The notes below the pieces were generated by a model. That model ran no database searches and was not told where the DNA came from. It worked only from the letters and a program-made list of their open reading frames with translations. Source: Macrostomum lignano (lineage: Eukaryota). From it: DNA of 64,000 nucleotides. A program made the position numbers and the translations under genes. The DNA is taken from the NCBI GenBank assembly GCA_002269645.1, contig NIVC01001860.1, positions 164,990 through 228,989 of the forward strand, read 5' to 3'. The number at the start of each line of letters is the position of its first letter. Positions within the stretch are counted from its first letter, which is position 1. Positions 10,902-38,800 of this stretch are shown here, piece after piece.

Positions 10902-10931
10902 CTTAGTTAGTCAGTCAGTCAGTTAGCTAGC

Positions 10932-11015
<84 letters not shown>

Positions 11016-11123
11016 CAGTCAGTTAGTTATTTAGTTAGTTAGTTAGTTAGTTAGTTATTTAGTTAGTTATTTAGTTAGTTAGCTAGTTAGTTCGTTACTT
11101 AGTTAGTCAGTCAGTCAGTTAGC

Positions 11124-11170
<47 letters not shown>

Positions 11171-11186
11171 CTAGTCAGTCAGTCAG
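9283..11186. repeat. 1.9-kb (TTAG)n tetranucleotide satellite with variant units
   Basis: Continuous TTAG with interspersed TCAG, CTAG, TTAT, TTCG and TTAC variants. Confidence 0.98.
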
Positions 11187-20065: not shown

Positions 20066-23000
20066 CTAGGATGAGCCGGCCCCGGCCGACAGCTGCTGGT
20101 TGACAGACTCCAGGCGTTTCAACACGGAACCGTAGCTGAACTTGGCCTGGCCTGGGTTGAACGGGTCTCGCATCGGCTTGCCGTCTCGGTTGATGTGGCG
20201 CCTGCACAGGTCTGTGTAGTACTGGTAGTGCTGCCCGAAAGCGTTGCGCATCTCCTGGAGGGACAGGGCAGTTCGGTGTGAGTCAAGATCCCAATCCCTG
20301 ATCCCATTCTGAAATCCCAATCCCTGATCCCATGCTAAAATCCCAATCCCTGACCCCATGCTGAAATCCCAATCCCTGACCCCATGCTGAAATCCCAATC
20401 CCTGACCCCATGCTGAAATCCCAATCCCTGACCCCATGCTGAAATCCCAATCCCTGACCCCATGCTGAAATCCCAATCCATGATACCATTCTGAAATCCC
20501 AATCCCTGACCCCATGCTGAAATCCCAATCCCTGACCCCATGCTGAAATCCCAATCCATGATACCATTCTGAAATTCCAATCCCTGATCCAATGCTGAAA
20601 CCCCAATCCCTGGTCCCATTCTGAAATCCCAATCCCTGACCCCACACTGAAATCCCAATCCCTGACCCCATGCTGAAATCCCAATCCCTGATCCCATTCT
20701 GAAATCCCAATCCCTGACCCCATGCTGAAATCCCAATCCCTGACCCCATGCTGAAATCCCAATCCCTGACCCCATGCTGAAATCCCAATCCCTGACCCCA
20801 TGCTGAAATCCCAATCTCTGACCCCATGCTGAAATCCCAATCCCTGACCCCATGCTGAAATCCCAATCTCTGATCCCATGCTGAAATCCCAATCCCTGAC
20901 CCCATGCTGAAATCCATGACGCCAACCGGAGAGACGGCTCAGCGTGCTTGGCTACGCCGATGACCTCGCCCTGCTGTCCTCGACCGTCGAGGGCGCCCAA
21001 CGACAGCTGGATAGGCTGGTTGCCGTTGCGGCGAGCGTCGGCCTGGTGGTCAACACGCAGAAGACCGTTGTGCTCTGCGTGCCGGACGACATCGAGACTA
21101 CAATCTTCTGCCGAGGCGCTGACGGACAGGCGAGTGAGCTTCCAAGATGTCAGCAGTTCGTCTACCTTGGCGGTCTGGTTCCCAACGTCCGCGAGGATCT
21201 GCGGCTTCGCCGAGGACTTGCCTGGGCTGCCTTTCGTTCTATAAGGTCAGTCCTGCAGTCCGAGGCCCTACCGGACCGCCAGAGGGCGGCGCTGTTCCAG
21301 GCGGTGATCGAGACCGTCCTGTTATACAACGCCGAGACCTGGACGCTGACAGACTCGCTCGAGGCTCAAGTCGACGCGGCACACGCTGGCCTGCTGCGCG
21401 CCGCCTTCAAGATCGGCAACGAGCGAGTCACCAACACGGCGCTCTATCATCGCGCCGGCCTGGCCCGTCCTAGCGATCTGCTGCGCCGTCGGCGACTCCA
21501 GCTGGCAGGCCACGTCATCCGCGCCGAGGCCTACTGTCCGGAGCCGGTGCAGGAGGTGCTGCTACTTACGTTGCAGGCACCCTACCGGCGGGGACAGGCG
21601 AGGACTCGGCGCTACATCGACTGTCTGCTGGCTGACGCCGGCGCCCCGGACTCTGCCGGCGGTGCGGCCTTTGTTCGCGCCCAAGCTTCGAAGCGCGCCA
21701 TCTGACGCTGCTTTTGCGAACTGGCAGCGTACTCTGTTGTTGTTTGAAATCCCAATCCCTGACCCCATGCTGAAATCCCAATCCATGATACCATTCTGAA
21801 ATCCCAATCCCTGATCCCATGCTGAAACCCCAATCACTGACCCCACTCTGAAATCCCAATCCCTGATCCCATGCTGAAACCCTAATCACTGACCCCATGC
21901 TGAAATCCCAATCCCTGACCCCATGATGAAATCCCAATCCCTGACCCCATGCTGAAACCCCAATCCCTGACCCCATGATGAAATCCCAATCCCTGACTCC
22001 ATGATGAAATCCCAATCCCTGACCCCATGCTGAAATCCCAATCCATGATACCATTCTGAAATCCCATCCCTGACCCTATTGCAGCGCATGGCTTAAGTAC
22101 GCCAGACGCCTACACAACCTGCGCCACGCTGTGAAATGACTTACCTATGAAAGAAACTCTAAAGCAAAATTAACGCAGTTTTGGGTAAACGGCAGGAGTA
22201 ACTATGACTGTCTTATCAAGCCTAAATGCCTCGGCATCTAATTAGTACCGCGCCGCGCCGTACTAATCGCCGCGCGCCGTACGCGCCGCGCCGCGCCGTA
22301 TTAGATCCGCGCCGGACGCCGTCCGCCAAAATGCCCATGCGCTGCAATCAGGATCCCTGATCCCACTCTGAAATCCCAATCCCTGATTCCATGCTGAAAC
22401 CCTAATCACTGATCCCGTTCTGAAACCCCCATCCCGGAATGCCATCAGCCACCTGTCTGAGCAACTGCGGCATGGGCACCCGGCCTTCCATCATCTCGCA
22501 GACGGCCACGCGAAGAGTCTCATGCTGCACAATGTCGTTATACTCGTCGCACTTCTTGACGCTGGCGCTAGCGAAGCCGGGCTCGTTTCGGTAGGGCTTT
22601 TCGTTCATCAGCGACTGCACAGAGAGCAGGACGGAGCGGAGGCCCATAGCCGGCGTCCAGCAGGGGCCCACCCAGGTGCCCAAGATGCTCAGGCAAACTT
22701 TGCCGTTCTTGTACAGGTTCGGGTTGAAGCGCACCTGTGCGACGGAGTACAGGTGTTTCAACAGTGTTACAAAAAAAATTCCAGAAGCTCAGGAACCTAC
22801 CGGAAATTTGCATAAACTTTCCGGGGAACTCGAAGCTTGAAGATGATTAAATTCAGAGATCATGAAACTTGAGGCTATGAACTGTGGGATCGAATGAGTT
22901 TGGGGATCATTAATATCAGGGATTAATGAGTTTGGGTCATTAATGTCAGGGATTAATGAGTTTGGGTCATTAATGTCAGGGATTAATGAGTTTTGGATCA

Positions 23001-25042
23001 TTAATGTCAGGGATTAATGAGTTTGGGATCATTAATGTCAGGGATTAATGAGTTTGGGGATCATTAATGTCAGGGATTAATGAGTTTGGGATCATTAATG
23101 TCAGAGATTAATGAGTTTGGGATCATTAATGTCAGGGATTAATGAGTTTGGGGATCATTAACGTCAGGGATTAATGAGTTTGGGATCATTAATGTCAGGG
23201 ATTAATGAGTTTGGGTCATTAATGTCAGGGATTAATGAGTTTGGGTCATTAATGTCAGGGATTAATGAGTTTGGGTCATTAATGTCAGGGATTAATGAGT
23301 TCGGGGATTAATGAGTTGGGGATCATTAATGTCAGGGATTAATGAGTTTGGGGATCATTAACGTCAGGGATTAATGAGTTTGGGATCATTAATGTCAGGG
23401 ATTAATGAGTTCGGGGATTAATGAGTTTGGGGATCATTAACGTCAGGGATTAATGAGTTTGGGGATCATTAATGTCAGGGATTAATGAGTTTGGGATCAT
23501 TAATGTCAAGGATTAATGAGTTTGGGATCATAAATGTCAGGGATTAATGAGTTTGGGATCATTAATGTCAGGGATTAATGAGTTCAGGGATTATTAATGT
23601 CAGGGATTAATGAGTTTGGGATCATTAATGTCAAGGATTAATGAGTTTGGGATCATAAATGTCAGGGATTAATGAGTTTGGGATCATTAATGTCAGGGAT
23701 TAATGAGTTCGGGGATCATTAATGTCAGGGATGAATGAGTTCGGGGATCATTAATGTCAGGGACTAATGAGTTTGGGGATCATTAATGTCAGGGACTAAT
23801 GAGTTCGGGGATCATTAATGTCAGGGATGAATGAGTTCGGGGATCATTAATGTCAGGGACTAATGAGTTTGGGATCATTAATGTCAGGGACTAATGAGTT
23901 TGGGGATCATTAACGTCAGGGATTAATGAGTTTGGGATCATAAATGTCAGGGATTAATGAGTTTGGGGATCATTAATGTCAGGGATGAATGAGTTTGGGA
24001 TCATTAATGTCAGGGATTAATGAGTTTGGGATCATTAATGTCAGGGATTAATGAGTTTGGGATCATTAATGTCAGGGATTAATGAGTTTGGGGATCATTA
24101 ATGTCAGGGATGAATGAGTTTGGGATCATTAATGTCAGGGATTAATGAGTTTGGGATCATTAATGTCAGGGATTAATGAGTTTGGGATCATTAATGTCAG
24201 GGATTAATGAGTTTGGGGATCATTAACGTCAGGGATTAATGAGTTTGGGATCATTAATGTCAGGGATTAATGAGTTTGGGGATCATTAACGTCAGGGATT
24301 AATGAGTTTGGGGACCATTAATGTCAGGGACTGAGGTTGGGGATCATTAATGTCAGGGATTAATGAGTTCGGGGATCATTAATGTCAGGGATTGTTGAGT
24401 CTGGGGATCATTAATGTCAGGGACTAATGAGTTCGGGGATTGGTGAGTTTGGGGATTGTTGAGTTTGGGGATCATTAGTGTCAGGGATTAATGAGTTCGG
24501 GGATTAATGAGATTGGGGATCATTAGTGTCAGGGATTAATGAGTTCGGGGATTATTGAGTGTGGGGATCATTAACATAAGCATCAATAAGTTTGATTTGG
24601 ATCAATAAAGTTTTAAATTGCAAGAGGAAATCAAAAAGAGTTCGAAAGGTCGCTGAGCTGGGCTCACCTGCCCGCTCCCAGTGGTCATGAGCTGGGCCTT
24701 GGGCGGCTGCATGGGATACTGCTCGGTGACTCGCAGCACGAGATAAAAGAAGCCACCCTGATATGGCGTGCCGCTGGGGCCGATGAGCAGGGCGTGCACC
24801 CTGCCCAGATCGTCTTCATCCTGCACAGCTGCTATGCCAGGCAGTGGGTTAGTGACCAGGTCCAGCAGTTCCCTGGTCACCCGCGACAGGCACGTGGGTG
24901 GCAGTGGGCTGGTGTACCCATTGGGGCTCCAGTCCTCAGCCCTGCTGTAGGAACTGGCTGGCCCGGGGCCATGCTTGAATGGCAAATGGGCCGCCTTCTT
25001 GGCTTGCTTGGCTAGCGGCTGCCCATCATCACTAGAGGCCAT
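20066..25042 (-). CDS. UBE2Z: Ubiquitin-conjugating enzyme E2 Z (USE1)-like, 281 aa; exons 25042-24668, 22734-22453, 20254-20066
   Basis: [17 protein letters not shown]; TTGSGQ|[21 protein letters not shown] with catalytic Cys; [12 protein letters not shown]; [11 protein letters not shown]; MRDPF. Both introns are phase 0, GT-AG. Confidence 0.93.
20916..21744 (+). mobile_element. 5'-truncated RTE-like non-LTR retrotransposon (RT C-terminal part)
   Basis: YADD motif ([10 protein letters not shown]), [14 protein letters not shown] and [11 protein letters not shown] in an open frame to 21705. (GTT)n tail. Flanked by tgaaatcc at 20908-20915 and 21745-21752; this putative TSD is also part of the host repeat unit. 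Confidence 0.88.
22078..22348. mobile_element. 271-bp insert with 14-bp terminal inverted repeats carrying a 28S rRNA fragment
   Basis: ATTGCAGCGCATGG (22078-22091) and CCATGCGCTGCAAT (22335-22348) are exact reverse complements. The insert interrupts the 26-bp minisatellite. Confidence 0.6.
22183..22246 (+). pseudogene. 64-nt degenerate 28S (LSU) rRNA fragment, helix 69-71 region (R2/I-PpoI target)
   Basis: GGGTAAACGGCAGGAGTAACTATGACTGTCTTATCAAGCCTAAATGCCTCGGCATCTAATTAGT versus the conserved eukaryotic GGGTAAACGGCGGGAGTAACTATGACTCTCTTAAGGTAGCCAAATGCCTCGTCATCTAATTAGT (recalled). Confidence 0.85.
22900..24575. repeat. 29-30-bp minisatellite filling UBE2Z intron 1
   Basis: Unit gggatcattaatgtcagggattaatgagttt, more than 50 copies. 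Confidence 0.97.
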
Positions 25043-25595
25043 GGCTCAGCAGCCAGTGAAGTGAAATAATAAGACAAAACATAACCTGTGACAAGAGACT
25101 TTGTTTTTCATTTCAATTGCATCTAGCAACTTAAAATTGCCAGTAGAATTATTTTGTAGATTATTAGATTCTACATACATATTGATCACTTTTAGTGAAA
25201 AAACCTATCAATATAAAACTTCACCTCTTGATATTTGATGTGATGCTAACTTGACATATGCAAAAAATATTATTATTTACCAATTTGTAACCTGGTTTAT
25301 CCATGATACTTTTCAACATGATTAATTATTTTAAATGCATTTTTATCTCATAGCACTTATGAATTTAAATCTTGAATTAATTCTTAATATTAAAAATTTA
25401 AAAAAATTATTTTTTCCTTGCAAAACACTAGGATTAAAGATTCTATCTAGTTTTTATTATTTTTTAAAGCATTTTTGAATATCAAAATGGTTGGCCAGGT
25501 GATAGATACTAGTTGAAAGACACTGCTTACTGGGGCAAATGGGTGGCAATGTTGCTGAGTATATATACTATAATAAATTAAAAAAGTAATACAAG

Positions 25596-26413
25596 TGTAG
25601 AAGGGTCTATGTTTTAATTAGTATTTTTTGCGAAATTAAATTCCCGCCAAATAACAAATACTGTATATTTTTGTTTAAATGCATTATTTTGTTTAAACGT
25701 AGAAATTTTGTTTTAGTAAGGTGAAATAATTTTGTTTTAATTTGATGTTGTTTTAATGCATGTTACACGAGCCAATTAGACGAGACTGTAACCACTATAA
25801 AAATAAGGCCACAAAAGAACGTTTAACCTCAACCTTTCGGGTTCCTAATCAGTTAACAGGAAATTAAGATTTCTTGGTTCTTCTGAATTAGTCCTTTGAA
25901 GCAGTATTGCAGACTAAGTTACCGTGTTGGATAGCAGAAAGCATTTTGCCAGTACAGTGATAAGCAGGGATTGCTAATTAAAGAGGGTGGAATACCCAGT
26001 AAAGAGGGTGGAATACCCAGTGCAAAGAGGGTGGAATACCCAGTACAAAGGGTGGAATACCCAATGTAGAAAGGTTGGATTACCCAGGAAGGGAGAATTT
26101 TCAGGTTGCTCAGATTAGCGTAATGCAGTTCTAAGTCGTGAGAGACAGTAATAAAGGAAGCCGGAAACCCCTCGGTCTGTGGTAAACGCCGTGTTTGGAC
26201 TGGATAATTTTAGGAATTTAGCAGTAGTCAGCAGTGTCTTGCCGCTCGGGCACTGAAGCTACCAAGGGTAACTCGTAGCGACGATAGCCCATAACGTAAA
26301 AGTACATATAAGTATAGAAATAGGATTCTTAGAAATAGCAAATTTAGCAGTTTTAGTACAGTTCAGTGATTCAGCTTTAGAATTAAATAGAGAGAGCCAG
26401 AAGGCCTGCTACA
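25596..26413 (+). repeat. 5' LTR (818 bp)
   Basis: TGTAG...CTACA inverted termini. About 98% identical to 33646-34463 (about 17 substitutions by eye). Internal tandem aaagagggtggaatacccagt repeats at 25980-26087. Confidence 0.95.
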
Positions 26414-26416
26414 ACT

Positions 26417-26427
26417 TGGTGGCAGCG
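26417..26427 (+). other. Primer-binding site TGGTGGCAGCG (tRNA-Leu type)
   Basis: Starts 3 nt after the LTR CA. Matches the first 11 nt of the complement of the metazoan tRNA-Leu(AAG/UAG) 3' end (TGGTGGCAGCGGTGGGAT, recalled). Confidence 0.75.
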
Positions 26428-27170
26428 TAAAGGATTGAGGAACCGGCAAGAATCTAGTATAGTGTTTTAAGTAGTTAAAAGTACATTTCAAAAGTACATT
26501 CGGATAAGATGGCTGCAAGAATTAATGATGCAATTGCACTTTTAGCTGAGGAGATTAGGAATAGATTAGAGCTAGGACCATTGAGGCATGTGAAGATACA
26601 GAAGTTTACGCCTAGTCAGGATATTAGGATTTAGCTCACTGCTTTCAACCAGAGGTGCGAAGCAGAAGGAATAGAAGTAGAGCATAGGAAGACTGAGCTA
26701 CTAGCTAACTTAGATCTAGCGACAGCATTTGCTGCAGTGCAAAGGTTGAATTTGCCTGATGAACTAACTTACGAGGAGTTTAAGGAGCGCTTAGTAGAGA
26801 GGTTTGGTAGGATAGGTAGTGCATCAGAATTTTAGGAGGAATTCCATGGAAGAATGCAGGGTAGGAACGAGACTGCGGAAGCTTATGCCGACGCATTGAT
26901 TGAGTTGTCCACAAGGGCTTTTCCGAATATGAACGCTGAACAGCGCGAGGAAGAAGTTGTTGAACAGTTTATTAAGGGGGTAAGAATCCCAACAGACACT
27001 AGGGAGAAGCTAATTTTTGCGCAGCCAGCTAATCTGCAGGAGGCTAGGAGAATGTTGCATAGGATTGAAGCAGCCTGGCATATGTCACACAAAGGAGGTG
27101 TGAAGATGGTGAAGGAGGGAGAGGATGAGCAGCAGAAGCTACAGGAGCTGGTGAGACAGCAGAAGGATGA

Positions 27171-28309
27171 TCGTCTTGAGTCACCGGCCATGCTTCAGAC
27201 GAGTAGGCCTGTGGCTCCTGAGCCTTGCCGGTATCCACATCGGAGACATAGACCGCCAGCACTACCCGGCTCTCCCGCCGTGGCACTTAGCCGACCAGGC
27301 GATCACCATCGCTACCGATCTCGCCCGGCCGACCAAAAGATCCGACCCACTGGAGGCCCGCCGTGCTGCGGCAGAAGCCACCTTGGCCCTGTTACCGAGC
27401 GCCGACTGCACCATCTGGACGGACGGCTCCGTTAGCCCGGACGGCACTGCTGCCGGCGGAGGTGCTCTCCTCACTGCCGAATCCATCGAGGCACTCCGCA
27501 TGTCCATCCGCCAGCAAGCCGGAAAGTGGTGCAGTAGCACCCACGCTGAATTGGTCGCCATCGAGGCAGCGATAAGAGCCCTACGTCAAACCCTCGACAC
27601 CATCGGCAACCCGCGGCTCTCGGTTCACATCTGTACCGACTCACGATCAGGCCTTCAGGCCATCAACCAAGGCCCGTACCGTTCTACTAATTCGCTCGTC
27701 CTCACGATCTGGCGACTCATCACCGACCTCCCAGCTCAGACCAGGCTCCACTTCCAATGGGTTCCTGGCCACGCGGACATTGCTGGTAACGAGGCGGCGG
27801 ACGCCCTCGCCCGCGAAGCTGCAGAATTGGAACCGAACACCGCGCAACTTTCCCAGGCCTCCGCCAAAAATGCCGTCCGCCACGTACTGTCCAATTGGAG
27901 AACTGCGCGGGACCGCACGCATCCGCACCTGACTCCGACGCCAGGCCACGATGACCTTCCCAGGTGGGGCCAGGTGACGGTCAGCCAAATCCGCACTAAG
28001 AAATCCCCCCTGACTTGCGACACCCTGTTTCGGTTCGGCCTCGCTCAGAACGACCGATGCGCCGACTGCGGAGAACCGGACTCGGTCGATCATCTTATGC
28101 TCTACTGCCCCTGCCACCACCAGGCCCGCATCCGCACCTGGGGCGGGGTGGTCATTTCCTGGAACGACGTTCTCGAGGGTGGCGGCGCCCTCATCTGTGA
28201 CTACCTCAAGAGGGTGGGTCGGACCGAGCCGCCCATTGACGACCCTGGCGGCCACCCGGCCCCGCCCCGGCCGCCTGCGAGCGGTCGGAGGTCGGAGTGA
28301 AGAAAAGAA
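27171..28309 (+). mobile_element. 5'-truncated I-group (Ingi/I/Loa/R1-like) LINE with RNase H, inserted in gag
   Basis: RNase H motifs IWTDGS, AELVAI, ICTDSRS and WVPGHADIAGNEAADALA. C-terminal CADC...H....C knuckle. A-rich tail. 13-bp TSD agcagaaggatga at 27158-27170 and 28310-28322. Confidence 0.92.
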
Positions 28310-28604
28310 AGCAGAAGGATGAGCTGGAACAGCAGAGGAAGAGAATTGAAGAGCTCATGGCGTATAAGCCACTGTACAAGCCAGGGCCTCAGCCATGTCC
28401 AGCTCAGATGCCACGTCAAGCATCTCAGCAGCAGCCGGCGTTTCAGCCACGAATTTCGAATATGTATTGGCCCAGGCCAAGGAGTGAGTTTGTAGGCAAA
28501 TCATTTGTGCCACAGCCAGGAAAGTGTGCAGTCTGCCAGAATCTGGGACCGATAAGGCCTGGTTTGGATCACCAGTGCCGCTTGTTCCGTAATCGAGGTA
28601 ATCA

Positions 28605-28611
28605 GGGAAAC
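28605..28611 (+). other. -1 ribosomal frameshift slippery site G GGA AAC at the gag-pro junction
   Basis: X XXY YYZ heptamer in the gag frame directly before the TAG. The -1 frame is open into the protease ORF. A GC-rich stem (gagg...gacg aggcca cgtc cctc) follows. Confidence 0.75.
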
Positions 28612-29765
28612 TAGAGTTCGAGGGCCGAGAGACGAGGCCACGTCCCTCCAGAAAATTTAATTGCAAAGTGAAGGCCTCTAAGTGCGATTCTGAAGGTTGG
28701 CAAACTGTCCCCATTCAAAAGAGACATATGCGTGATGCAACTGTATATAATGCATTTAATGCACCTGCGTCTGCACCATCTGTATTTTCTGCGTCTGCAC
28801 CATCTGCATCTGCACCATCTGCATCCGCCACATCGCAATATGTTGTCCCTGCATCTGCTGTTGACAAGTCAGCATCAGCCGATGAGCCCCGAGAAGAAGA
28901 AGAATCTGCACCCGAAGCAAGCCAACCAAAGCCAAAGAAGGTAAGCAAGTGCAAAGTTTTTGTCAAATCTAAGGTAGAACTAGTGAATCATAAAAGTTAT
29001 GAGGCAATAGTAGTAGGCGATATAGAAAAGCAGGAGGTAGACTTTTTATTAGACACGGGTGCTAGAAGCAATTTCTTAAGCCGATCAGTGTGGTCAAAAT
29101 TATTCAAACAAGATCAAATTAGGGAGACGAATAAGAGAGTTTCCACATTCGATGGAACGAGAGTTCAGTTAGATGGCGAAGTGCGTGCTGCAGTGAAATT
29201 CGGAGACTTTGAGATCGAAATTGATTTCTTACTATGTAGCCACGAGTGTGACAACATACTTGGAATGGAGTTTTTCCTAGAGCAGTGTGAGAGCATTCAT
29301 CTAACAAAAGGCATGCTCATCTTGAAAGAAGGAACGTGTATTCCTATGCAATACACCCACCTTCTAGTAAAGGTTTGCCGAGTATATACGCAGGAGAAGG
29401 CAGTCATTCTGCCGAATAGTGCACTGCGAATCCCTGTGTGCCTAGCGAAAAATTCTGAAGCTAATTATGGAGCTCCGATGACAATTGAGACAATTGGAGA
29501 AGGCGTGAATGCCAGTAGAGAAGGCGTGAAAGCCAGTGAACCTGTGAACGAAGAAGGCGTGAGTGCCAGTAGAGAAGGCGTAAAAGCCAGTGAATCTGTG
29601 AATGAAGAAGGCGTGAGTGCCAGTAGAGAAGGCGTGAAAGCCAGTGAACCTGTGAACGAAGAAGGCGTGAGTGCCAGTAGAGAAGGCGTGAAAGCCAGTG
29701 AATCTGTGAATGGAGATGGCGTGAGTGTCATGAGAGAAGGCGTGAAAGCCGTGGAAAACTATTGA
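28605..29765 (+). CDS. Gypsy aspartic protease ORF ending in a 54-bp x4 repeat
   Basis: VDFLLDTGARSNFLS and ILGMEF motifs, then (EGVSASREGVKASEPVNE)x4 and a stop at 29765. Confidence 0.85.
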   Translation, partial: GKLEFEGRETRPRPSRKFNCKVKASKCDSEGWQTVPIQKRHMRDATVYNAFNAPASAPSVFSASAPSASAPSASATSQYVVPASAVDKSASADEPREEEESAPEASQPKPKKVSKCKVFVKSKVELVNHKSYEAIVVGDIEKQEVDFLLDTGARSNFLSRSVWSKLFKQDQIRETNKRVSTFDGTRVQLDGEVRAAVKFGDFEIEIDFLLCSHECDNILGMEFFLEQCESIHLTKGMLILKEGTCIPMQYTHLLVKVCRVYTQEKAVILPNSALRIPVCLAKNSEANYGAPMTIETIGEGVNASREGVKASEPVNEEGVSASREGVKASESVNEEGVSASREGVKASEPVNEEGVSASREGVKASESVNGDGVSVMREGVKAVENY

Positions 29766-29772
29766 TGGAGAG

Positions 29773-31802
29773 ATGCAGACTCCGCATCCCACTGATTCAG
29801 AATCTAGGATCGAGTCATTAATCTCGGGAGAGAAAGGTGTGAAAGGAACTGATGTGTCAGCACTGAGTTCTAGCACTATGCAACTGAACCGAGACACTGA
29901 TCCTGAACACATGAAGAATGATACGCCTAAAGTTGAAAAATTATTGACTGATTATTTGCTAGTACCTTTGAAGAGGGAACAGATTGTAAAAGCTCAGAGA
30001 GAGGACTCAGCAATTTGCACTTTGGCCAAATGGAAGCAAGACAAGCTGTTAGTTCCCCCATCTCAAGAGAGTGTTTCACCAGAGTTAAAGCAGTTAAGCA
30101 AGCATTATGAGAAAATGAAGCTAGAAAAGGATATGCTCCTTATTGAAGAGGATGAGAAATGGAAAGTCGTCTTGCCTAGATCCTTGGACAAGCTAGTTCT
30201 TAGCGATCTACATGATAGCCCACTAGCCGGACACTTAGGCAGAGATAAGACAATCCAGCAAGTTAAGGAGAGAGTTTGGAGACCAGGTTTAGTGACTGAG
30301 GTAGAGAAATATGTGGCAGAGTGTATTCCATGCCTAGAGAGCAAGAGAGGTCACAAGATTCAGGCGCCAGTGCAGTCATTTCCAATTAGTGAACTGTTTC
30401 ATAGATTGCATATAGACGTGATCGGGCCGATCTCAAAAGTAAGCAAGAGAGGGCACCAGTACGTTTTAACTATAGTGGACAGTAACACGCGATACCCGTT
30501 TGCTTTCCCAATGCGTAATCAGAAGGCAGACACGATTATCAAGTTATTACAAAAAAGAGTGTTCAGTGAGTATGGCCAGTGCCATTGGATCCACACATTT
30601 TGTATAATGTTAAGCATATGTGCACAACCCCATACCATGCCCAAAGTAATGGTTTGGTAGAGCAATTTAATAAACAAATTAAATCAATTATTACTTGCTT
30701 AATAGAGAAAGACCATAGCGATTAGGATCTGTTAATCCCAGCAGCATTAGTAGCAGTCAGAACCAGTGTGAATCAGACCACCGGATATTCACCTCATTTT
30801 CTATTATTCTGAAGAGAAGCAGTTTTACCTATGGATAGTGAGCTTAGAAAGTCGAGTAATTACGCTAATTATCCAACGTATGTTGCCAAACATGCTAAGA
30901 GGCTGGAGAGTGCAAGGAAGCTCGTGAGAGAGAAGTACGAGAAGGTGCATAGCCATAGACAGGAAAATGCAGAAAATCAGAAAAAGCCCAAAAATATCGC
31001 ACTAGGAAGTTTAGTATTAATCAATAATCTGCAATTAGAGAACGAGGAGTCAAATAAATTTCATAGGAAGAAGAGAGCAGCTTACAGAGTGCTGAAGCAG
31101 ATTTCAGAAGTTGTCTTTAAAATTCAGAAGGAAGAAAATGGAGAATTAACAGGCAATAAACTAATAGTGCATAGAGACAACATGACATTAGTACCGAACT
31201 CAGTCAAAGAGCCAATAGACAAGGGAGGCCAGCCCAGTATGCCGACTGCAGAGCTTCAAGATAAGGGAAGCCAGGCGGCAGAGGCAAAACGCAAGGGAAG
31301 CCAGCCCAAGAAGAAGACCAGAACTAGACCAACTAAGAAGTTATGTGAACAAGAAGAAGAGTCATCATCATCAGATGAAGAAGACCAAATCAATTGGCAG
31401 TGCAAACTCCGTGATGGAAATGAATCTGTAAGAGGAAGCGATTTAGAGATAGGAGCAGAAGTAGAAGTTAGGGAAGAAGGAAGCGAAGGTGAGAATCCAC
31501 AGCGTGAGAGCTCAGAAGAGGAGATTGAGGAAGAAATCGAAGCAGAGAGTGAGGAAAGTGAGAAGGGTGAGGAATCAGAGCTTGAGCACGAGGGAGAGAG
31601 AGAAAGTGAGGAGGAGGTTGCACGCGAGCACAGTGAGTCAAAGGAGGAGATATCGCATACCGAGCAGAGTGAGAGACAGGATGACGCAATACCAGCTAAA
31701 AGGTATAACACGCGCAGTCAGACCAAGCCTCCAAACAGATGTCAGTGCTATCTGAAAAGGCTAATCTCTGTGTGGAGCCTATTAGAGAGACTAAAATTCT
31801 GA
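29773..31802 (+). pseudogene. Gypsy integrase (frameshifted, core partly deleted) with acidic C-terminal tail
   Basis: HDSPLAGHLG...CIPC zinc finger; HIDVIGP (first catalytic D); TTPYHAQSNGLVE in another frame. The SDxG motif is missing. Internal stops are present. Confidence 0.85.
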
Positions 31803-31884
31803 GTCAGGGAAGAATTGATAGCAAGGGTAAGGCACAGAGCAAGCAAACAAGTGGGAGTTCATTGGGTAAGGGAAGGAAATCAGA

Positions 31885-32037
31885 GCAGCCAATTAGAAGC
31901 CAGCTATTGGGAAGGCCAGGAGTGGTCAACTGGGAAATCAGGGCGGTCAGCCAATGAAAATTCAGCTTTTGATTAAATGGATTGATGGGCAAATTAAAAC
32001 AAACAACACCTGGGGTGGGGTGCCACGCCTATATAAA
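31885..32037 (+). promoter_or_regulatory. Putative internal promoter for ORF3
   Basis: CCAAT at 31889 and 31951, TATATAAA at 32030-32037, about 100 nt before ATG 32136. Confidence 0.45.
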
Positions 32038-32135
32038 CAAACACCCAGAGGCGAGAGGAAGTCAATTATAGTCGTGTTGACAGCTAGTAACCGTTTTGGT
32101 ATCGATTGACCGTGTTGGATTGCGATAGTTCCATA

Positions 32136-33242
32136 ATGGAAGATACAATTGACATAATGGCGGAAGACGATATTTTAGACAAAATTTTAGCTGACATTGA
32201 GGTAGGAAGTGTAGAGGAAATTGAAGGAAGTGCGAGTGCAAAGTCATCAGGAGACAACGCTGTGATGGCAGCGGGACCGGCAAAGACGTCAGGTGACGAC
32301 GCTGTGATGGCAGCAACGATGAAGTCGCCAGGAGATGACACCGTGATGGCAGCAGCAGCGACGGTAAGGTCCGACAGCAGTGCCGTGATGGTAGAAGATG
32401 AAGAGGACTGTCCGAACAAGCGGCTGAAGTCGGTAGTCATTAAGAGGACATCAACTGAGGCAGAAGGTGCGCAGTCGGCGAAGCGGCCTGCTCTAGGGAA
32501 CCAGTCATTAGTTCCACATGATCCAAAGGCCCGAGCGTGGCTGTTAAGCGACCAAGCTAACAGGCCAGTGCCTGTCATTCCGGCCATTATGAAGCAGCAA
32601 CCACAGGGCGCCAAGAGCGCTATATGTCTCGCTAGTCAGTACCAGCTGATTCAGCCGAAGCCACCGACAGTAGCTGGCGGGCAAGGACAGGCGGCAGCAA
32701 CAGCATCGGCGACAGCCAGCCGTCGAGGGCCATCAGCAGCCTCAGCAGCAGCAGCAGCGATCGGCGGGCAGCCTGCGCCAAGGTTGACGACAGCGCCAGC
32801 GCCAGCGCCGACCACGATCCTGAAGCGGTCACAGGATGCGGCAGCTTGCAGTTCAGCCAGTGCCGCAGACCTCAGTCTAGGATCTGACTTCCCGGCCGTG
32901 CTCGACCGAATCCCGAGAGCTCAACATGATCAGTTGAAACGCTTTATTAAAATGCTTAAGGGACATTTGATGCGCATGGCGTATCTACGCACCGATCGGC
33001 CAACTCCATGTCGGTGCACACAGGCCAAACCAGTGTTGCGCCTGCTGACGCAGCAGTTCGATCTAGAGTCAAGAATCGCAGCATGGCGCCGAGCCGTGCA
33101 ATACGCGCTGCACGATCTGACACAAGCTGGGCAAACATTTCATCGGCTATTGCTGCAAATCAAGATCCGCTGGATGGCGGACCAGCTTGGCTGGCCATAC
33201 CATGACCAACTGCCTGAGGAGTTCAAACTGGAACGCAATTAA
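32136..33242 (+). CDS. Extra ORF3 of the LTR element, 368 aa, unknown function
   Basis: Intact ORF between integrase and the 3' LTR. Acidic and Ala/Pro-rich N-terminal two thirds, helical basic C-terminal domain. No obvious signal peptide or TM segment. Confidence 0.75.
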   Translation: MEDTIDIMAEDDILDKILADIEVGSVEEIEGSASAKSSGDNAVMAAGPAKTSGDDAVMAATMKSPGDDTVMAAAATVRSDSSAVMVEDEEDCPNKRLKSVVIKRTSTEAEGAQSAKRPALGNQSLVPHDPKARAWLLSDQANRPVPVIPAIMKQQPQGAKSAICLASQYQLIQPKPPTVAGGQGQAAATASATASRRGPSAASAAAAAIGGQPAPRLTTAPAPAPTTILKRSQDAAACSSASAADLSLGSDFPAVLDRIPRAQHDQLKRFIKMLKGHLMRMAYLRTDRPTPCRCTQAKPVLRLLTQQFDLESRIAAWRRAVQYALHDLTQAGQTFHRLLLQIKIRWMADQLGWPYHDQLPEEFKLERN

Positions 33243-33645
33243 GTACATCTTGACTATTTGAACTAACTTTTGCAATTGAATTACTTTTATTACTAGGACA
33301 ATACCTTTTCTCTTTTAAACTTGCTTATTCTGCGTGAATTCTATGCCAACGCTATTTTGAATTTGCTTATTTTGTGCTATTTTTTCTTTGCCTTGCATGA
33401 CATTTTTGTACTCATTCTTTGTGAAGTAGCTTTTATAAATTTCTTATCTTCTGCATGCACAATTTTTATTTCTGGTAAACAGTTGTTTGATGATTTAGTG
33501 CTTTTCGAATGTATATGTATATTTTTTGCAATTACATTTATCATTTCATGCCATTACCACATTGCTCAATTTTTGATGAATATGTATTTTTGTGTATCAT
33601 TTTGTTCACTTAAAAATTCGCAAAATAATATTCAGGGAAGCCAAT

Positions 33646-34463
33646 TGTAGAAGGGTCTATGGTTTAATTAGTATTTTTCGCGAAATTAAATTCCCGCCAA
33701 TTAACAAATACTGTATATTTTTGTTTTAATGCATTATTTTGTTTAAATGTAGAAATTTTGTTTTAGTAAGGTGAAATAATTTTGTTTTAATTTGATGTTG
33801 TTTTAATGCATGTTACACGAGCCAATTAGACGAGACTGTAACCACTATAAATATAAGGCCACAATAGAACATTTAACCTCAACCTTTCGGGTTCCTAATC
33901 AGTTAACAGGAAATTAAGATTTCTTGGTTCTTCTGAATTAGTCCTTTGAAGCAGTATTGCAGACTAAGTTACCGTGTTGGATAGCAGAAAGCGTTTTGCC
34001 AGTACAGTGATAAGCAGGGATTGCTGATTAAAGAGGGTGGAATACCCAGTAAAGAGGGTGGAATACCCAGTGCAAAGAAGGTGGAATACCCAGTACAAAG
34101 GGTGGAATACCCAATGTAGAAAGGTTGGATTACCCAGGAAGGGAGAATTTTCAGGTTGCTCAGATTAGCGTAATGCAGTTCTAAGTTGTGAGAGACAGTA
34201 ATAAAGGAAGCCGGAAACCCCTCGGTCTGTGGTAAATGCCGTGTTTGGACTGGATAATTTTAGGAATTTAGCAGTAGTCAGCAGTGTCTTGCCACTCGGG
34301 CACTGAAGCTACCAAGGGTAACTCGTAGCGACGATAGCCCATAATGTAAAAGTACATATAAGTATAGAAATAGGATTCTTAGAAATAGCAAATTTAGCAG
34401 TTTTAGTACAGTTCAGTGATTAAGCTTTAGAATTAAATAGAGAGAGCCAGAAGGCCTGCTACA
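33646..34463 (+). repeat. 3' LTR core (818 bp)
   Basis: Collinear with the 5' LTR. Preceded by a short purine tract cagggaagcc. Confidence 0.95.
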
Positions 34464-34619
34464 ACTTGGTATCAGCTGTGGGATCCAGTAGAAATAGAGA
34501 GAACGCCTACGACAATTTTGTGGCATTTAGTGGGATTCTGAGAGATAGAGGAAGCAACCCTACAACAACTTGGTGACAAGTCGGTGGGATATTATAAATT
34601 AGCGAAGGGACCTGCAACA
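34464..34619 (+). repeat. Array of three (PBS-like + LTR-end-like) cassettes extending the 3' LTR
   Basis: CA-ending units at 34463, 34514, 34567 and 34619. The first three are each followed by T(G/T)GT...GTGGGAT; the last is followed by the TSD CAAG. Confidence 0.8.
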
Positions 34620-35810
34620 CAAGTTTAAGGTCAGATCTACAATTCAATAAACTCAGTCAATAGTCTAGAACAATTTGGTTTATAGGGAATTACTATAATG
34701 TTATGACTTTTGGGGAGAATTGCTAAGATATCAAGGCTTAGGCCCTATACTAGTTATAGGCCCTACTAAGGGAAGAATCAATGAGCTGTCAAAGCTAGGC
34801 CTAAAGATGCTAAATACTACTAGATGGTTCACTTTAATATATTTAGCAAAACTACTCTATATTTAATAATTATTTATTTAAATATATTTATTTATTTATT
34901 TATTAATTATTTATTTACCTAGCTAGCCTATTTATTTATTTACCTAGCTCCAACCTCCAATAGTATATTTTGATCCATTGCCAAGCTTGGCCATAGACAA
35001 CAGAATTGAAAGCAGACAGCTAAGTTTTGCATATGATGCCTACACCTACTCATAGATATAAGATAGACATAGGGCCTAGACTTAGGCTTATAAGTTATAG
35101 ACAGCACAGCACATCATGGGCTAATTAAAATAGTTAGGCCCTATGACTAGGCCTAGTTAAATTAAAATTGTGCTTTCTACTACTTAAAAAAGAATAAGCT
35201 GAATATAAGATAAACATAACAACCTAAGCCCTAGCCTAGCCCTAGGTTAGACCAAAGCCAATCTACAGCCTATAGAGTATAGGCCTATAATAGGCCTAGG
35301 GCTAGGCTAGGCCCCCCTAGGCTTAGACTATAAGGCCTAGGCGTGTCGACTATTATAAGCATTTAGGTCTATTACTACTAGACTAACCACTATAAAAACT
35401 TACGGCTAATAAAAAAAATTCATGCATATCCTTCAAAATACTATCGATGCTATTCGCTTACGTAGACCATTCTAATTATTCTATCCATTATCTCCGACGG
35501 CTGAATATGCCAGTGATTACTTGCTTACAAGCTAGTACATGTCGTAAAGATGCTAAGTAGTTTGTCCATTTTTTAATTTAAATGTTGTGAAAATAAGTTC
35601 TATAATATTTTTAATAATAATTGTTCGAAATTTTTCACTTCTATCACGAAACATTTTCTGATTTGTTATTCTACGCATCTATGTTTTAATCGACATTTTT
35701 CAACTTACAACGGAGGTTCCTATTTTTGCTGTCATTCGCGTAGTAGGGTTACTATTCATTTTTAATTTTGTCACATACCACATTATCACCGTAAACGTTT
35801 TTAAAGCAAA

Positions 35811-38800
35811 ATGGCTGATTGCCTAAGAAAGCTTGTCACAATTAGGTCTTTTTCATTGCTGCAGGAACGACTGGACAGATGGAATCAAACATATAAGGTA
35901 CGCAAACTATAGCCTGCAGATACCGACACTCATATCAACACAATAACCCCTTAGATAAGAGTGTATAGTCGCAGCTCTGAAATAAATTTGGAAAACGAAA
36001 TATATATTGCATGGCAATAATAACATAATCAAAAGCCATAAATCTCTGGTTAACGAAAATACTTCTATCATTTTATCGCCGGTAAAAGTTTTTACCGTTC
36101 ATGCACATTGCACTATCTCAGCTGGGGGTGAATGCATTGCCCTGTAGACCCTAACTGGCCTATGACTCCCTATACCTAGTTTAGGCACTAGAACACTTAA
36201 GCAAAACTTTTCATGCCATAATTTATTTGCAGCACAATTCCTACGACGAAAATTTGGCGAATGCGTGCGAACTAATTGAACTGAATGCGCGAGTGCAGAG
36301 CCAGCTGTTTAAATTGCTCAGCCTTTGCGCAGCTGAAGGTAATTATATGCTACCTTTGTATGGAATTGCTTCAAATGAGGTACAATTAACTTCTTTTCAA
36401 TAAAGCTGAGTGTTTCAAAACCGTACGCGACTTCAGGTGACCTACTCGGTGCGCATCCAGCCACTATTCGAGCTCGACTGCAGCCGCTGCTCGGCCCGGA
36501 CTTTTTCGAATCCGCCGCCGCCGATCAAGCCGACGATGAGGACGATGACGTCCCCGCCGGCTGCCTGAGCGCTGACGCAGCGCTAAGCGTTATCGCCAAC
36601 GCTGGAGCTGCTCGTTCACATCAGCAGCCTGCCTGTGGTGCTCCAGGTAGACGATTCGTCGACGTCGACGAAGTCAAAATTCCCGGCGCTGAGTTGGACG
36701 AACTCGAGCATGACCTGCGCCTGATGCGGCGAGCCAACGACGGAATTCGGGCGCAGTGAGTCAAATTTATTACAAAGGCTTTAGCACCAACAGGTGACAC
36801 CCTGTCTAGCAGCTGACACTCCTGTCTAACAGCTGACACTCCTGTCTAACAGCTGACACTCCTGTCTAACAGCTGACACTCCTGTCTAACAGCTGACACT
36901 CCTGTCTAGCAGGTGACACATTTATCTAAAATGCATTTCATCCTTGCTAAACAGTCAAGCAGCACCTCATCCATCAGCTGATGATTCCTCAGTCTTGGAT
37001 TTGAGAATACAAAAAGAAAGCAATTCAAAAGAACAGTAGACACAGATGAGTAATATACTCGCAATTTGCCACCGATTATCGCCGCAGACTTGTACAGGCC
37101 AGAACGGAGCTGGAACGGCAGGCGAGAGTGTCAGCAGGTGAGAAGATGCTGGCTGACAACGAGATTCGAGAGCTCACTGCTAGGTGAGTGGCTAATCTAG
37201 TGGCGAAAATTCATGAGTTGTTCGGAGGGCTATGGGCACCCTGGCGCAACGCCTTTGGAGACGTCGTCTCGTTACAGCATCGACTCCTGAGCACATGCAA
37301 GTGCGCCAATACTGTACGCAGACATACTCTCATACACACGCTCACGCAGGGTGTACATTCTGTGTGCCTTGGGGCTTGGGTCCGTGGCGCGACAGTAAGA
37401 CGAGTTCACCACTGAACTGCGATTTGAGGCAAAATCGGGTCACTAATTAATAAATTTTCTACAAATTGAAAGTGATGAGCTGCATCTCAATGCCGGAGCT
37501 TGATGACTGCAAAATCTGCTCTGCACACCACCACAGGCTCACTAATTCAGAGGCCGAAAACGACCGGCTGAGAGCGCGGGTCCGCCAGCTTGAAGGGTAC
37601 GACAGACAAGTCCAGCGGCTTCGAGAGGACGTCACCGCGCTGCAGCAGCAGCAGAAACAGCAGAAACAGCAACAACAGCAAGAACTAGAGCGAGAGCAGC
37701 AGCAGCAGCAACAGCTGCAGCAGGAGTCGAGGAGGCCGCAGCAGCAGTCCCGATCGCGAGCTGCAACGCCCAGTGACGGAATCAGGCGACAGGCGCCCAT
37801 CACTGACGGGTAATGCGTGCTGCTTCGCTGCTGGCTGTGGTAGGGGGTGTCGGGGAGGGAGGTGGGTGTCGGGGAGGGAGGTGGGTGTCGGGGAGGGAGG
37901 TGGGTGTCGGGGAGGGAGGTGGGTGTCGGGAAGGGAGGTGGGTGTCGGGGAGGGAGGTGTGTGTCGGGGAGGGAGGTGGGTGTCGGGGAGGGAGGTGGGT
38001 GTCGGGAAGGGAGGTGGGTGTCGGGAAGGGAGGTGGTTGTCGGGAGGGAGGTGGGTGTCGGGGAGGGAGGTGGGTGTCGGGGAGGGAGATGGGTGTCGGG
38101 AAGGGAGGTGGTTGTCGGGGAGGGAGGTGGGTGTCGGGGAGGGAGGTGGGTGTCGGGGAGGGAGATGGGTGTCGGGGAGGGAGATGGGTGTCGGGAAGGG
38201 AGGTGGGTGTCGGGGAGGGAGGTGGGTGTCGGGGAGGGAGGTGGGTGTCGGGGAGGGAGGTGGGTGTCGGGGAGGAGTTGGGTGTCGGGAGGAAGGTGGG
38301 TTTCGGGGGGGAGGTGGGTGTCGGGGAGGGAGGTGGGTGTCGGGGAGGGAGGTGGGTGTCGGGGAGGGAGGTGGGTGTCGGGGAGGGAGGTGGGTGTTGG
38401 AGATAGTGAGTAGATGTGTATCGGGGTGGGAGCTGGGTGTCAGAGATTTGAGATCGGTGCAATAGAAGCCGTTGTGAGAAGTATGATTTGACTGTTGCAA
38501 GTTTGAGCTGTTGGAAAATCTGCAAGTAGACTGCGGCAACCCTCGACCCGATCAGAGCCCTCAGCGACACTGTGGACCGGCACCTGGCACAGCGGGGGCC
38601 ACCCGGGCCTCAGTCCCCGCTGTCGCTGAGCCATCCTTGGCAGCAGTCGCGCCAGCAGCACCTGATCGCCCGCTTCAACGAGGCTTTCACGGCGTCCCGA
38701 GCCGAAGCGATGGAGGCGCTGCGCTGTTGCTATGATGACCACGAGAACAACCAGAGAATTGTCTACGCTGCAGTTGTGGTGAGGGCGACTTCTAGGCTGA

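What the first reader, a model, noticed from the sequence alone, without database searches (positions are those of the whole stretch)
34441..34623. Tandem array of primer-binding-site + LTR-end cassettes on a Gypsy 3' LTR: a possible multi-primer leader system
Seen: the 818-bp 3' LTR ends at CTGCTACA (34463), but no TSD follows. Instead come three ~52-bp units (ends at 34514, 34567, 34619). Each has a PBS-like 18-22-mer (TGGTATCAGCTGTGGGAT; TTGTGGCATTTAGTGGGAT; TGGTGACAAGTCGGTGGGAT) and then a diverged copy of the LTR's last ~30 nt (aaatagagagaacgcctacgaca; gagatagaggaagcaaccctacaaca; aaattagcgaagggacctgcaaca). Only after the third unit does CAAG appear, matching the CAAG before the 5' LTR. 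The 5' LTR lacks the array and carries a fourth, different PBS (TGGTGGCAGCG). Known: TGGT...GTGGGAT is the complement of tRNA-Leu isoacceptor 3' ends, and integrase needs a terminal CA. Inference: the parent element has a leader of four PBSs, each preceded by its own usable attachment end, so priming at any of them gives an integrable cDNA. This copy would have primed at the distal PBS, carried the array into the 3' LTR, and collapsed the 5' side by repeat-mediated strand transfer or deletion. Such a cassette array could widen primer choice or help evade 3'-tRNA-fragment silencing. I do not recall this architecture being described.
Basis: partly seen in the sequence, partly recalled or inferred. 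Interest (0 to 1): 0.92.

Follow-up and report, generated by a model that had tools for sequence, protein, structure and literature searches.

The report
Decayed primer-site repeats on retrotransposon end
A dead Ty3/gypsy-type retrotransposon in an animal genome carries, after its right-hand long terminal repeat (LTR), three worn-out tandem copies of its "LTR tip + tRNA-Leu primer site" junction; this is a real and unusual structural variant, but nothing shows that it works as a multi-primer system.

Summary
The two 818-bp LTRs are at 25596-26413 and 33646-34463. They differ by 16 substitutions and no indels. The 3' LTR is followed by three units of 51-53 bp (34464-34619). Each unit has a PBS-like (primer binding site) 18-20-mer and a copy of the last ~25 nt of U5. 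The units resemble each other far more than chance allows (p<0.001). The resemblance drops sharply after 34619. There CAAG repeats the CAAG that precedes the 5' LTR.

Most likely the array was part of the inserted cDNA, as an extension of U5. This requires priming at the innermost PBS (TGGTGGCAGCG).

- The three extra PBS-like copies look like decayed paralogues of that one Leu PBS, not like sites for different isoacceptors.
- Two of them have 8-9 nt instead of 7 nt in the acceptor-stem segment.
- Their invariant columns are not clustered beyond chance.
- The array has no special RNA fold.
- One scan of the JGI metagenome collection found no tRNA matching unit 1.

No other copy of the family could be retrieved, so the family-level test is still open. 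A weak hint (p about 0.02) that the repeat continues into the flanks is unresolved. Interest is modest.

The parts
25592..25595 (+). CAAG, putative left copy of a 4-bp target-site duplication
   Evidence: Sequence. The same 4-mer lies at 34620-34623. Caveat: the 4 nt before the 3' LTR are CAAT, a 3/4 match.
25596..26413 (+). 5' LTR, 818 bp, TGTAG...CTACA. TATA-like ctataaaaataagg, AATAAA, and a 21-bp tandem repeat inside.
   Evidence: blastn self-match and global alignment: 16 substitutions, no indels. Sequence.
26414..26427 (+). 3-nt spacer ACT, then the presumed functional PBS TGGTGGCAGCG (26417-26427)
   Evidence: The next 8 nt (TAAAGGAT) depart from the tRNA.
27404..27823 (+). RNase H (PF00075)-like domain in a GC-rich ORF (27167-28300) upstream of protease; probably captured or nested sequence
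   Evidence: Pfam E = 4.4e-16. GC-rich sequence at its 3' end.
29016..29273 (+). Retropepsin-type aspartyl protease domain
   Evidence: Pfam Asp_protease_2 1.4e-9, gag-asp_proteas 1.4e-8, RVP 1.4e-3
30175..30561 (+). Integrase zinc-binding (H2C2) domain and start of the catalytic core
   Evidence: Pfam Integrase_H2C2 2.8e-17, rve 1.1e-4
31083..31184 (+). Integrase C-terminal domain, Ty3 p58 type, in a different reading frame from the core
   Evidence: Pfam Integrase_p58_C 1.4e-5, just below its cut-off
33634..33640 (+). Short purine run AGGGAAG, the only polypurine-tract candidate; it lies 5 nt before the 3' LTR
   Evidence: Sequence
33646..34463 (+). 3' LTR, canonical 818-bp part
34464..34514 (+). 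Unit 1: ACT + PBS-like TGGTATCAGCTGTGGGAT (34467-34484) + CCAGTAG + U5-end-like AAATAGAGAGAACGCCTACGACA (34492-34514)
   Evidence: PBS-like copy matches 15/18 of the Leu AAG/TAG PBS with correct geometry.
34515..34567 (+). Unit 2: ATT + PBS-like TTGTGGCATTTAGTGGGAT (34518-34536) + spacer + U5-end-like GAGATAGAGGAAGCAACCCTACAACA (34542-34567)
   Evidence: TGG start lost, and 8 nt instead of 7 nt in the acceptor segment.
34568..34619 (+). Unit 3: ACT + PBS-like TGGTGACAAGTCGGTGGGAT (34571-34590) + ATTAT + U5-end-like AAATTAGCGAAGGGACCTGCAACA (34596-34619). This is the presumed true right end of the inserted DNA.
   Evidence: One substitution and two 1-nt insertions relative to the Leu AAG/TAG PBS.
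34620..34623 (+). CAAG, putative right copy of the target-site duplication
   Evidence: It is the only CAAG in 34400-34900 that follows a ...CA end.

Best explanation
25596-34619 is one defective Ty3/gypsy-type LTR retrotransposon in an animal genome. Its right end is a long LTR: the canonical 818 bp plus 156 bp made of three decayed tandem copies of the ~52-bp segment that spans the U5 tip, a 3-nt spacer and the tRNA-Leu primer binding site.

Inferred history:
(1) In an ancestor of this copy, the U5/PBS junction was duplicated in tandem. The element also has a 21-bp tandem repeat inside its LTR.
(2) The upstream copies decayed. Only the copy next to the internal region (TGGTGGCAGCG) stayed able to pair with the 3' end of tRNA-Leu.
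(3) Minus-strand synthesis was primed there, so the relic copies lay between R-U5 and the primer. They were therefore copied as part of U5.
(4) The right end of the cDNA was the last U5-like ...CAACA. Integrase joined it to the target and made the 4-bp duplication CAAG.
(5) The 5' LTR lacks the 156 bp because of a second event. This was either a deletion between the 10-nt direct repeats ACAACTTGGT (an RT template switch or later slippage) or recombination with a relative that has a short U5.

Shown here: the anatomy, the paralogy of the units, the sharp end of the array at CAAG, and the 11-nt tRNA-Leu match. Inferred: steps 1-5. On this reading the extra PBS-like copies are relics, not working primer sites.
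For: - Units 1-3 and the LTR tip + PBS are mutually homologous (at most 0.07% of random windows score as high, z = 6.4-7.3). A profile built from the units hits the 5' LTR/PBS junction at E = 7e-9.
- LTR homology continues 13 nt into unit 1.
- Similarity drops from z > 6 to z = 2.1 and then 1.0 right after 34619. The next 4 nt equal the 4 nt before the 5' LTR.
- The units are only about 60-70% alike while the LTRs are 98% alike. The array is therefore older than this insertion and must have come in with the cDNA.
- The four PBS-like copies share one consensus, which equals the Leu AAG/TAG PBS. Only the innermost keeps 11/11 at the priming end. Units 2 and 3 carry indels that break tRNA geometry.
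- Invariant columns are not clustered beyond chance (p = 0.39), and the array has no special RNA fold.
- tRNA-Leu PBSs are common in metazoan Ty3/gypsy elements (PMC13524379).
- No nucleotide similarity links 34464-36500 to the element's own internal region. This argues against a tandem second element.
Against: - There is only one copy, and no family-level data could be obtained.
- The model needs a second event to explain the short 5' LTR.
- CAAG is only 4 nt (chance about 0.4% per site, about 1.7% over four candidate ends). The 4 nt before the 3' LTR are CAAT.
- The junction motif ACAAYTTKGT recurs at 34670, in phase and beyond CAAG (6 matches in the window vs 0.68 expected).
- In-phase windows of both flanks resemble the units weakly (p = 0.009-0.023, p = 0.04, 0.04, 0.017, 0.37). 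The array may therefore extend into what I call flank.
- The tRNA-Leu sequences are from memory, and the host's own tRNA set is unknown.
- PBS-like copy 1 has perfect tRNA geometry, so a host isodecoder that matches it cannot be excluded.
Confidence: 0.45

Rival explanations
1. The family has a leader with several working PBS + attachment-end cassettes for different tRNA-Leu species. Priming at any of them gives an integrable cDNA, and this copy used the distal one.
For: - Each unit keeps TGGT (TTGT in unit 2) and GTGGGAT, the parts shared by all tRNA-Leu 3' ends. The units differ mostly in the acceptor-stem segment.
- Each unit ends in ...ACA + AYT, like the real LTR end.
- Unit 1 has perfect 18-nt tRNA geometry.
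- The TSD after the last unit shows that a CA end other than the canonical one was used.
Against: - Units 2 and 3 have 8-9 nt where a tRNA has 7 nt, and unit 2 lacks the TGG that pairs with CCA.
- None of the units matches any tRNA-Leu sequence I could supply better than 15/18.
- A tRNA with the 3' end that unit 1 needs was not found in JGI metagenomes. The single hit is not a tRNA.
- The conserved-ends, variable-centre pattern is not significant.
- A PBS in use should be refreshed to a perfect tRNA copy at each cycle (standard reverse-transcription scheme). These copies are not perfect.
- There is no evidence that the ends at 34514 or 34567 were ever used.
Confidence: 0.1
2. CAAG is a chance match. 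The sequence after 34463 was not brought in by this insertion. It is older DNA at the locus: the relic of a related element's U5/PBS repeat array, or a satellite derived from it. The present LTR-internal-LTR was placed against it by homologous recombination or by nested insertion.
For: - The 3' LTR runs straight into a PBS homologue, as a 5' LTR would.
- The junction motif recurs in phase at 34670, past CAAG.
- 34620-34672 aligns weakly, in register, to the units (p = 0.016, p = 0.017).
- Two in-phase windows of the left flank (25486, 25538) begin AATGG(T/G)TGGC and also score weakly.
- No second deletion event is needed.
Against: - The flank similarities are marginal once slack and composition are allowed for. 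I estimate a combined p of about 0.05 from the values.
- Ungapped autocorrelation of the joined flanks shows no 52-nt peak.
- nhmmer finds nothing significant in the flanks.
- There is no third LTR and no internal-region homology downstream.
- Identity falls from 98% to about 60% exactly at the LTR/PBS boundary. That looks like a reverse-transcription boundary, not a crossover point.
- Landing by chance in a roughly 300-bp relic of one's own family has a low prior.
Confidence: 0.22
3. The structure is an aberrant cDNA end or an assembly artefact. For example, a plus-strand strong-stop product that kept its tRNA-derived PBS and picked up further pieces by template switching and then joined without integrase, or a mis-join of reads.
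For: LTR + exactly 18 nt of PBS is the structure of plus-strand strong-stop DNA (standard scheme), and unit 1's PBS-like copy is exactly 18 nt.
Against: - The units differ from each other and from the LTR tip by 30-40%, while the LTRs differ by 2%. They cannot have been copied from this element in a single event.
- A CA end plus a matching 4-mer fits an integrase-made junction.
- Diverged repeats are not a typical assembly error.
Confidence: 0.05

Closest known systems
Canonical Ty3/gypsy (Metaviridae) LTR retrotransposons of animals with a tRNA-Leu primer binding site
   Same: - TG...CA LTRs.
- A PBS 3 nt after the 5' LTR that matches the tRNA-Leu 3' end.
- Protease upstream of an H2C2/Ty3-type integrase.
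- A 4-bp target duplication.
tRNA-Leu PBSs are reported as common in metazoan env-carrying Ty3/gypsy clades (PMC13524379).
   Different: - The right LTR is 156 bp longer than the left.
- The extra DNA is three decayed copies of the U5-tip/PBS junction.
- No reverse-transcriptase domain is detectable, and the coding region is broken.
Tandem repeats inside LTRs and 5' leaders of LTR retrotransposons (general knowledge; not tested here)
   Same: A short unit amplified head to tail inside non-coding parts of the element. This element also has a 21-bp repeat, 5 copies, in the LTR.
   Different: Here the unit spans the functional U5/PBS boundary, so each copy carries a pseudo attachment end and a pseudo primer site. 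I know of no description of that, and my literature searches found none, but those searches were shallow.
Engineered retroviruses with two primer binding sites, and RT-mediated deletion between direct repeats (from memory; not checked in the library)
   Same: With two PBSs in a leader, the PBS that is used defines where U5 ends, and direct repeats are readily collapsed during reverse transcription. The same logic explains a long 3' LTR and a short 5' LTR.
   Different: Those are laboratory constructs with identical, functional PBS copies. Here the copies are natural, old and decayed, and no use of the extra copies is shown.
Extended or bipartite primer contacts (Ty1 boxes, Ty3 bipartite PBS, HIV-1 primer activation signal; from memory)
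   Same: Sequences outside the 18-nt PBS that are complementary to other parts of the primer tRNA. Here GTGGGAT is complementary to the T arm.
   Different: Those are single extra contacts in the RNA. Here whole PBS + U5-tip units are repeated, and nothing shows that they contact the tRNA.

Membership tests
Ty3/gypsy (Metaviridae) LTR retrotransposon | Two direct long terminal repeats with TG...CA ends and short terminal inverted repeats | tested here: met
   818-bp LTRs, TGTAG...CTACA, 98.0% identical
Ty3/gypsy (Metaviridae) LTR retrotransposon | PBS complementary to a tRNA 3' end just inside the 5' LTR | tested here: met
   TGGTGGCAGCG lies 3 nt after the LTR and matches 11/11 of tRNA-Leu AAG/TAG + CCA.
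Ty3/gypsy (Metaviridae) LTR retrotransposon | Polypurine tract abutting the 3' LTR | tested here: inconclusive
   Only AGGGAAG (33634-33640), separated from the LTR by CCAAT
Ty3/gypsy (Metaviridae) LTR retrotransposon | pol order protease - reverse transcriptase - RNase H - integrase | tested here: inconclusive
   Protease (29016-29273) precedes a Ty3-type integrase (30175-30561, 31083-31184). No RVT domain was found even at E <= 1, and the gap of about 900 bp is too short for RT + RNase H. The integrase type (H2C2, p58_C) and its position argue for gypsy rather than copia.
Ty3/gypsy (Metaviridae) LTR retrotransposon | Target-site duplication of 4-6 bp flanking the element | tested here: inconclusive
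   No duplication at the canonical LTR end (ACTT vs CAAG). CAAG/CAAG appears only if the element ends at 34619. Chance is about 0.4-1.7%.
   Host tRNAs are unavailable. No tRNA with unit 1's 3' end was found in JGI metagenomes.
   No other copy was retrievable. Protein and DNA searches found no close relatives, and the host genome is absent from the collections.
   Invariant columns are not clustered beyond chance (p = 0.39). Indels break tRNA geometry in 2 of 3 copies.

The most novel reading that the evidence does not exclude
This Ty3/gypsy lineage keeps a leader with several U5-tip + PBS cassettes. It can start reverse transcription at more than one of them, or has repeatedly shifted its priming site along the array. 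That would produce progeny with LTRs of different lengths, each with a usable CA end. PBS duplication would then be a natural route by which LTR elements change or diversify their primer tRNA.
Probability: 0.1. Interest if true: 0.8.

Novelty: new variant of a known kind. Interest (0 to 1): 0.35.

Why it matters
How LTR retroelements change their primer tRNA, and how the U5 boundary is set, are usually inferred from comparisons between families. A copy in which the U5/PBS junction was duplicated, and in which the priming site now lies 156 nt inside the old one, would be a natural example. It would show that the LTR end is defined by primer position, and that duplicated PBSs can supply raw material for primer switching. 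As it stands, this is a single defective copy whose extra PBS copies look decayed. Its value is as a lead for a family-wide survey in the host genome, not as evidence for a new mechanism.

Tried and rejected
- Other copies of the family, none found:
  - Word-index protein searches with the protease segment (nothing at E <= 1e-10) and the integrase segment (two weak unrelated hits).
  - Exact-protein look-ups of the integrase ORF and of a host GPCR ORF (not on record).
  - An exact 20-mer of the LTR end in viral and metagenome contigs (0 hits).
  - A host SLC35F fragment shows why: its best NCBI relatives are only 45% identical, so the host genome is not in the collections.
- A tRNA for unit 1: the pattern TTCRAATCCCACAGCTGATA in metagenome contigs gave one hit, which is not a tRNA.
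- Tandem Leu PBSs elsewhere: TGGTGGCAGCG twice within 25-55 nt in viral contigs gave 17 IMG/VR contigs (2 of them GVMAG-labelled), several with 81-nt periodic matches, which I judged unrelated without reading them. Not followed up.
- Literature: three phrase searches on multiple or duplicated PBSs and on the PBS string found nothing on point. The eLife paper's PBS table is not held as text.
- Structured-RNA idea: the array folds no better than shuffles, and Rfam finds nothing.
- Tandem second element: rejected. There is no third LTR and no internal-region homology downstream.
- Array continuing into the flanks: tested five ways. It stays marginal.
- Conserved ends with a variable centre as a sign of selection: rejected by a column permutation test.
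Full report
**What is there**

A self-comparison of the window finds exactly two copies of an 818-bp repeat, at 25596-26413 and 33646-34463. Both begin TGTAG and end CTACA. They differ by 16 substitutions and no indels (98.0% identity, K2P 0.020). The sequence between them holds these protein domains:
- a retropepsin-type protease (29016-29273);
- a Ty3-type integrase, made of an H2C2 zinc domain and core at 30175-30561 and a p58 C-terminal domain at 31083-31184, in a different reading frame.

The reading frames are broken. No reverse-transcriptase domain is detectable even at E <= 1. A GC-rich ORF with a cellular-type RNase H domain sits where gag should be (27167-28300). This is therefore a defective Ty3/gypsy-type LTR retrotransposon.

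The host is an animal. The window also encodes a rhodopsin-family GPCR, an SLC35F transporter and an ankyrin-repeat protein. The nearest database relatives of the transporter are only 45% identical and come from a mollusc, fishes and cestodes.

**The observation**

Right after the 3' LTR come three units: 34464-34514, 34515-34567 and 34568-34619. Each unit has:
- a 3-nt spacer (ACT, ATT, ACT);
- a PBS-like (primer binding site) stretch: TGGTATCAGCTGTGGGAT, TTGTGGCATTTAGTGGGAT, TGGTGACAAGTCGGTGGGAT;
- 5-8 nt of filler;
- a copy of the last ~25 nt of the LTR that ends in ACA.

Together with the real LTR tip, this makes a 3.5-copy tandem array with a period of about 52 bp.

The units are only about 60-70% alike, which is why TRF misses them. 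Their mutual similarity is still far beyond chance:
- In local alignments, at most 0.07% of 3000 random windows scored as high.
- In-register global alignments gave z = 6.4-7.3.
- A profile built from the units finds the 5' LTR/PBS junction at E = 7e-9.

The 5' LTR is followed by ACT TGGTGGCAGCG and then an unrelated leader, with no array. CAAG precedes the 5' LTR (25592-25595) and follows the third unit (34620-34623). No duplication exists at the canonical LTR end.

**Corrections to the description**

First, LTR homology does not stop at 34463. It runs 13 nt further, ACTTGGTatCAGC against ACTTGGTggCAGC. The first PBS-like copy is therefore a paralogue of the 5' PBS rather than a different site.

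Against their 3' ends + CCA:
- The 5' PBS matches Leu AAG/TAG 11/11 from the priming end and then diverges.
- Unit 1 matches 15/18.
- Unit 3 matches 15/18 but with two 1-nt insertions.
- Unit 2 has lost the TGG start and has an extra base.

The position-by-position consensus of the four copies is TGGTGGCAGCGGTGGGAT, which is the Leu AAG/TAG PBS. A tRNA has exactly 7 nt between the discriminator base and the T stem. Units 2 and 3, with 8 and 9 nt there, cannot be continuous complements of any canonical tRNA.

**Is the array part of the insertion?**

The LTRs differ by 2% and the units by 30-40%, so the array is much older than this insertion. It either arrived inside the cDNA or was already at the locus. 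Four points favour arrival with the cDNA:
- The array ends exactly on a U5-like ...CAACA.
- The next 4 nt equal the 4 nt before the 5' LTR. The chance is 0.43% at one site and about 1.7% over the four candidate ends.
- Similarity to the units falls from z > 6 to z = 2.1 and then 1.0 at that very point.
- Nothing downstream resembles the element's internal region or a third LTR.

By the standard scheme of reverse transcription, the right end of the cDNA is set by the position of the tRNA primer. An array at the right end therefore means that the parental RNA carried it between U5 and the PBS that was used. That PBS is the one now next to the 5' LTR. In other words, the array is an extension of U5.

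**Why is the 5' LTR short?**

Normal reverse transcription would give both LTRs the array, so a second event is needed. The canonical junction and the predicted distal junction share the 10-mer ACAACTTGGT. A deletion between these direct repeats reproduces the observed 5' junction exactly. Such a deletion could arise by RT template switching while the 5' LTR was completed, or by later slippage. Recombination between a long-U5 copy (or solo LTR) and a short-U5 relative would give the same product. I cannot tell these apart.

**Is it a working multi-primer system?**

Nothing here says so.
- Two of the three extra copies have broken tRNA geometry.
- The impression of conserved ends and a variable centre does not survive a permutation test on the unit alignment. 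30 of 50 columns are invariant, the longest run is 7, and p = 0.39.
- The array folds no better than shuffled sequence (z = +0.5).
- Rfam finds nothing.
- A scan of JGI metagenome contigs for a tRNA gene with the 3' end that unit 1 needs found a single non-tRNA hit. This is weak evidence, because eukaryotes are sparse in that collection.
- A PBS in regular use should be reset to a perfect tRNA copy, because plus-strand strong-stop DNA copies the primer. That is established mechanism. The extra copies are not perfect.

The simplest reading is that they are relics of an old tandem duplication of the U5/PBS junction.

**An unresolved point**

The junction motif ACAAYTTKGT occurs six times in the window against 0.68 expected. 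Four of these are the known junctions. One is at 60808 and is consistent with chance. One is at 34670, exactly two unit lengths past the last full junction and beyond CAAG.

In-register alignments to the units give these results:
- 34620-34672: p = 0.016-0.017.
- Two left-flank windows at 25486 and 25538, both beginning AATGG(T/G)TGGC: p = 0.04 each against composition-preserving shuffles.
- A phase-aware test over both flanks: p = 0.009-0.023.

Against this, ungapped autocorrelation of the joined flanks shows no 52-nt peak, and nhmmer finds nothing there. I treat it as a hint that the element may lie in or next to an older relic of the same kind of array. In that case CAAG could be a coincidence. 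It is not strong enough to overturn the TSD reading, and I give that rival about 0.2.

**What could not be done**

The decisive test is whether other copies carry the array and where their TSDs lie. It needs the host genome, which is not in any collection I could reach. The literature searches were shallow and found no description of tandem U5-tip/PBS cassettes. They did confirm that tRNA-Leu PBSs are common in metazoan Ty3/gypsy elements (PMC13524379).

No full-length sequence was printed, saved or rebuilt.

**Verdict**

The array most likely is part of the inserted DNA and marks a priming site 156 nt inside the canonical U5 end, but the cassettes look like decayed paralogues of one tRNA-Leu PBS, not a set of working primer sites. 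It is a new structural variant of a known kind of element. It is of modest interest until a family-wide survey is done.

Noticed in passing
window 27167-28300 (+): A GC-rich 377-aa ORF with a cellular/LINE-type RNase H domain (PF00075, E = 4e-16) and a weak zf-RVT match lies upstream of the protease, where gag should be. It may be a captured or nested fragment. A zinc-knuckle-like CxxC...HxxC stretch follows at about 28525-28585.
   Followed up: partly
window 29274-30174: Only about 900 bp separate protease and integrase, and no reverse-transcriptase or Ty3-type RNase H domain is detectable even at E <= 1. The element has lost its RT and is non-autonomous.
   Followed up: partly
window 32106-33242 (+): A 378-aa ORF downstream of integrase has no Pfam match. 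It could be a third ORF, perhaps env-like as in errantivirus-type elements, or it could be decayed sequence.
   Followed up: no
window 34029-34137 and 25979-26087: A 21-bp tandem repeat (TAAAGAGGGTGGAATACCCAG, about 5 copies) lies inside each LTR. This shows that the element is prone to short tandem duplications.
   Followed up: partly
window 33642-33645 vs 25592-25595: The 4 nt before the 3' LTR (CAAT) match 3 of the 4 nt before the 5' LTR (CAAG). This is probably chance (about 5%), but it bears on the TSD reading.
   Followed up: partly
window 34670-34690; 25486-25551: Junction-like ACAATTTGGT lies in phase beyond the putative TSD. Two AATGG(T/G)TGGC motifs lie 52 nt apart in the left flank. 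Together they are a weak hint (p about 0.02) that the repeat extends into both flanks.
   Followed up: yes
window 60808-60817: Another exact ACAACTTGGT (GCACAACTTGGTGGAATTC). No LTR structure was found around it within the window. It is consistent with the 0.68 chance matches expected.
   Followed up: partly
window 22893-24568: A 1.6-kb satellite-like tandem array with a 31-bp unit (AATGAGTTTGGGATCATTAATGTCAGGGATT), about 51 copies, 90% matches. It lies about 1 kb upstream of the element.
   Followed up: partly
window 9283-11183: A 1.9-kb (TTAG)n microsatellite, about 475 copies.
   Followed up: partly
window 34735-35300: The right flank is rich in short TAGGCC/GGCCTA palindromic motifs (aggccctata, taggcctag and similar). 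It may be another repeat family.
   Followed up: no
window 14680-16320 (-), 53455-55032 (-), 57620-58492 (-): Host genes as long single ORFs: a rhodopsin-family GPCR, an SLC35F transporter and an ankyrin-repeat protein. The SLC35F fragment is 76% identical to one Logan contig protein and at most 48% identical to annotated animals (mollusc, fishes, cestodes). The host is a poorly sampled metazoan.
   Followed up: partly
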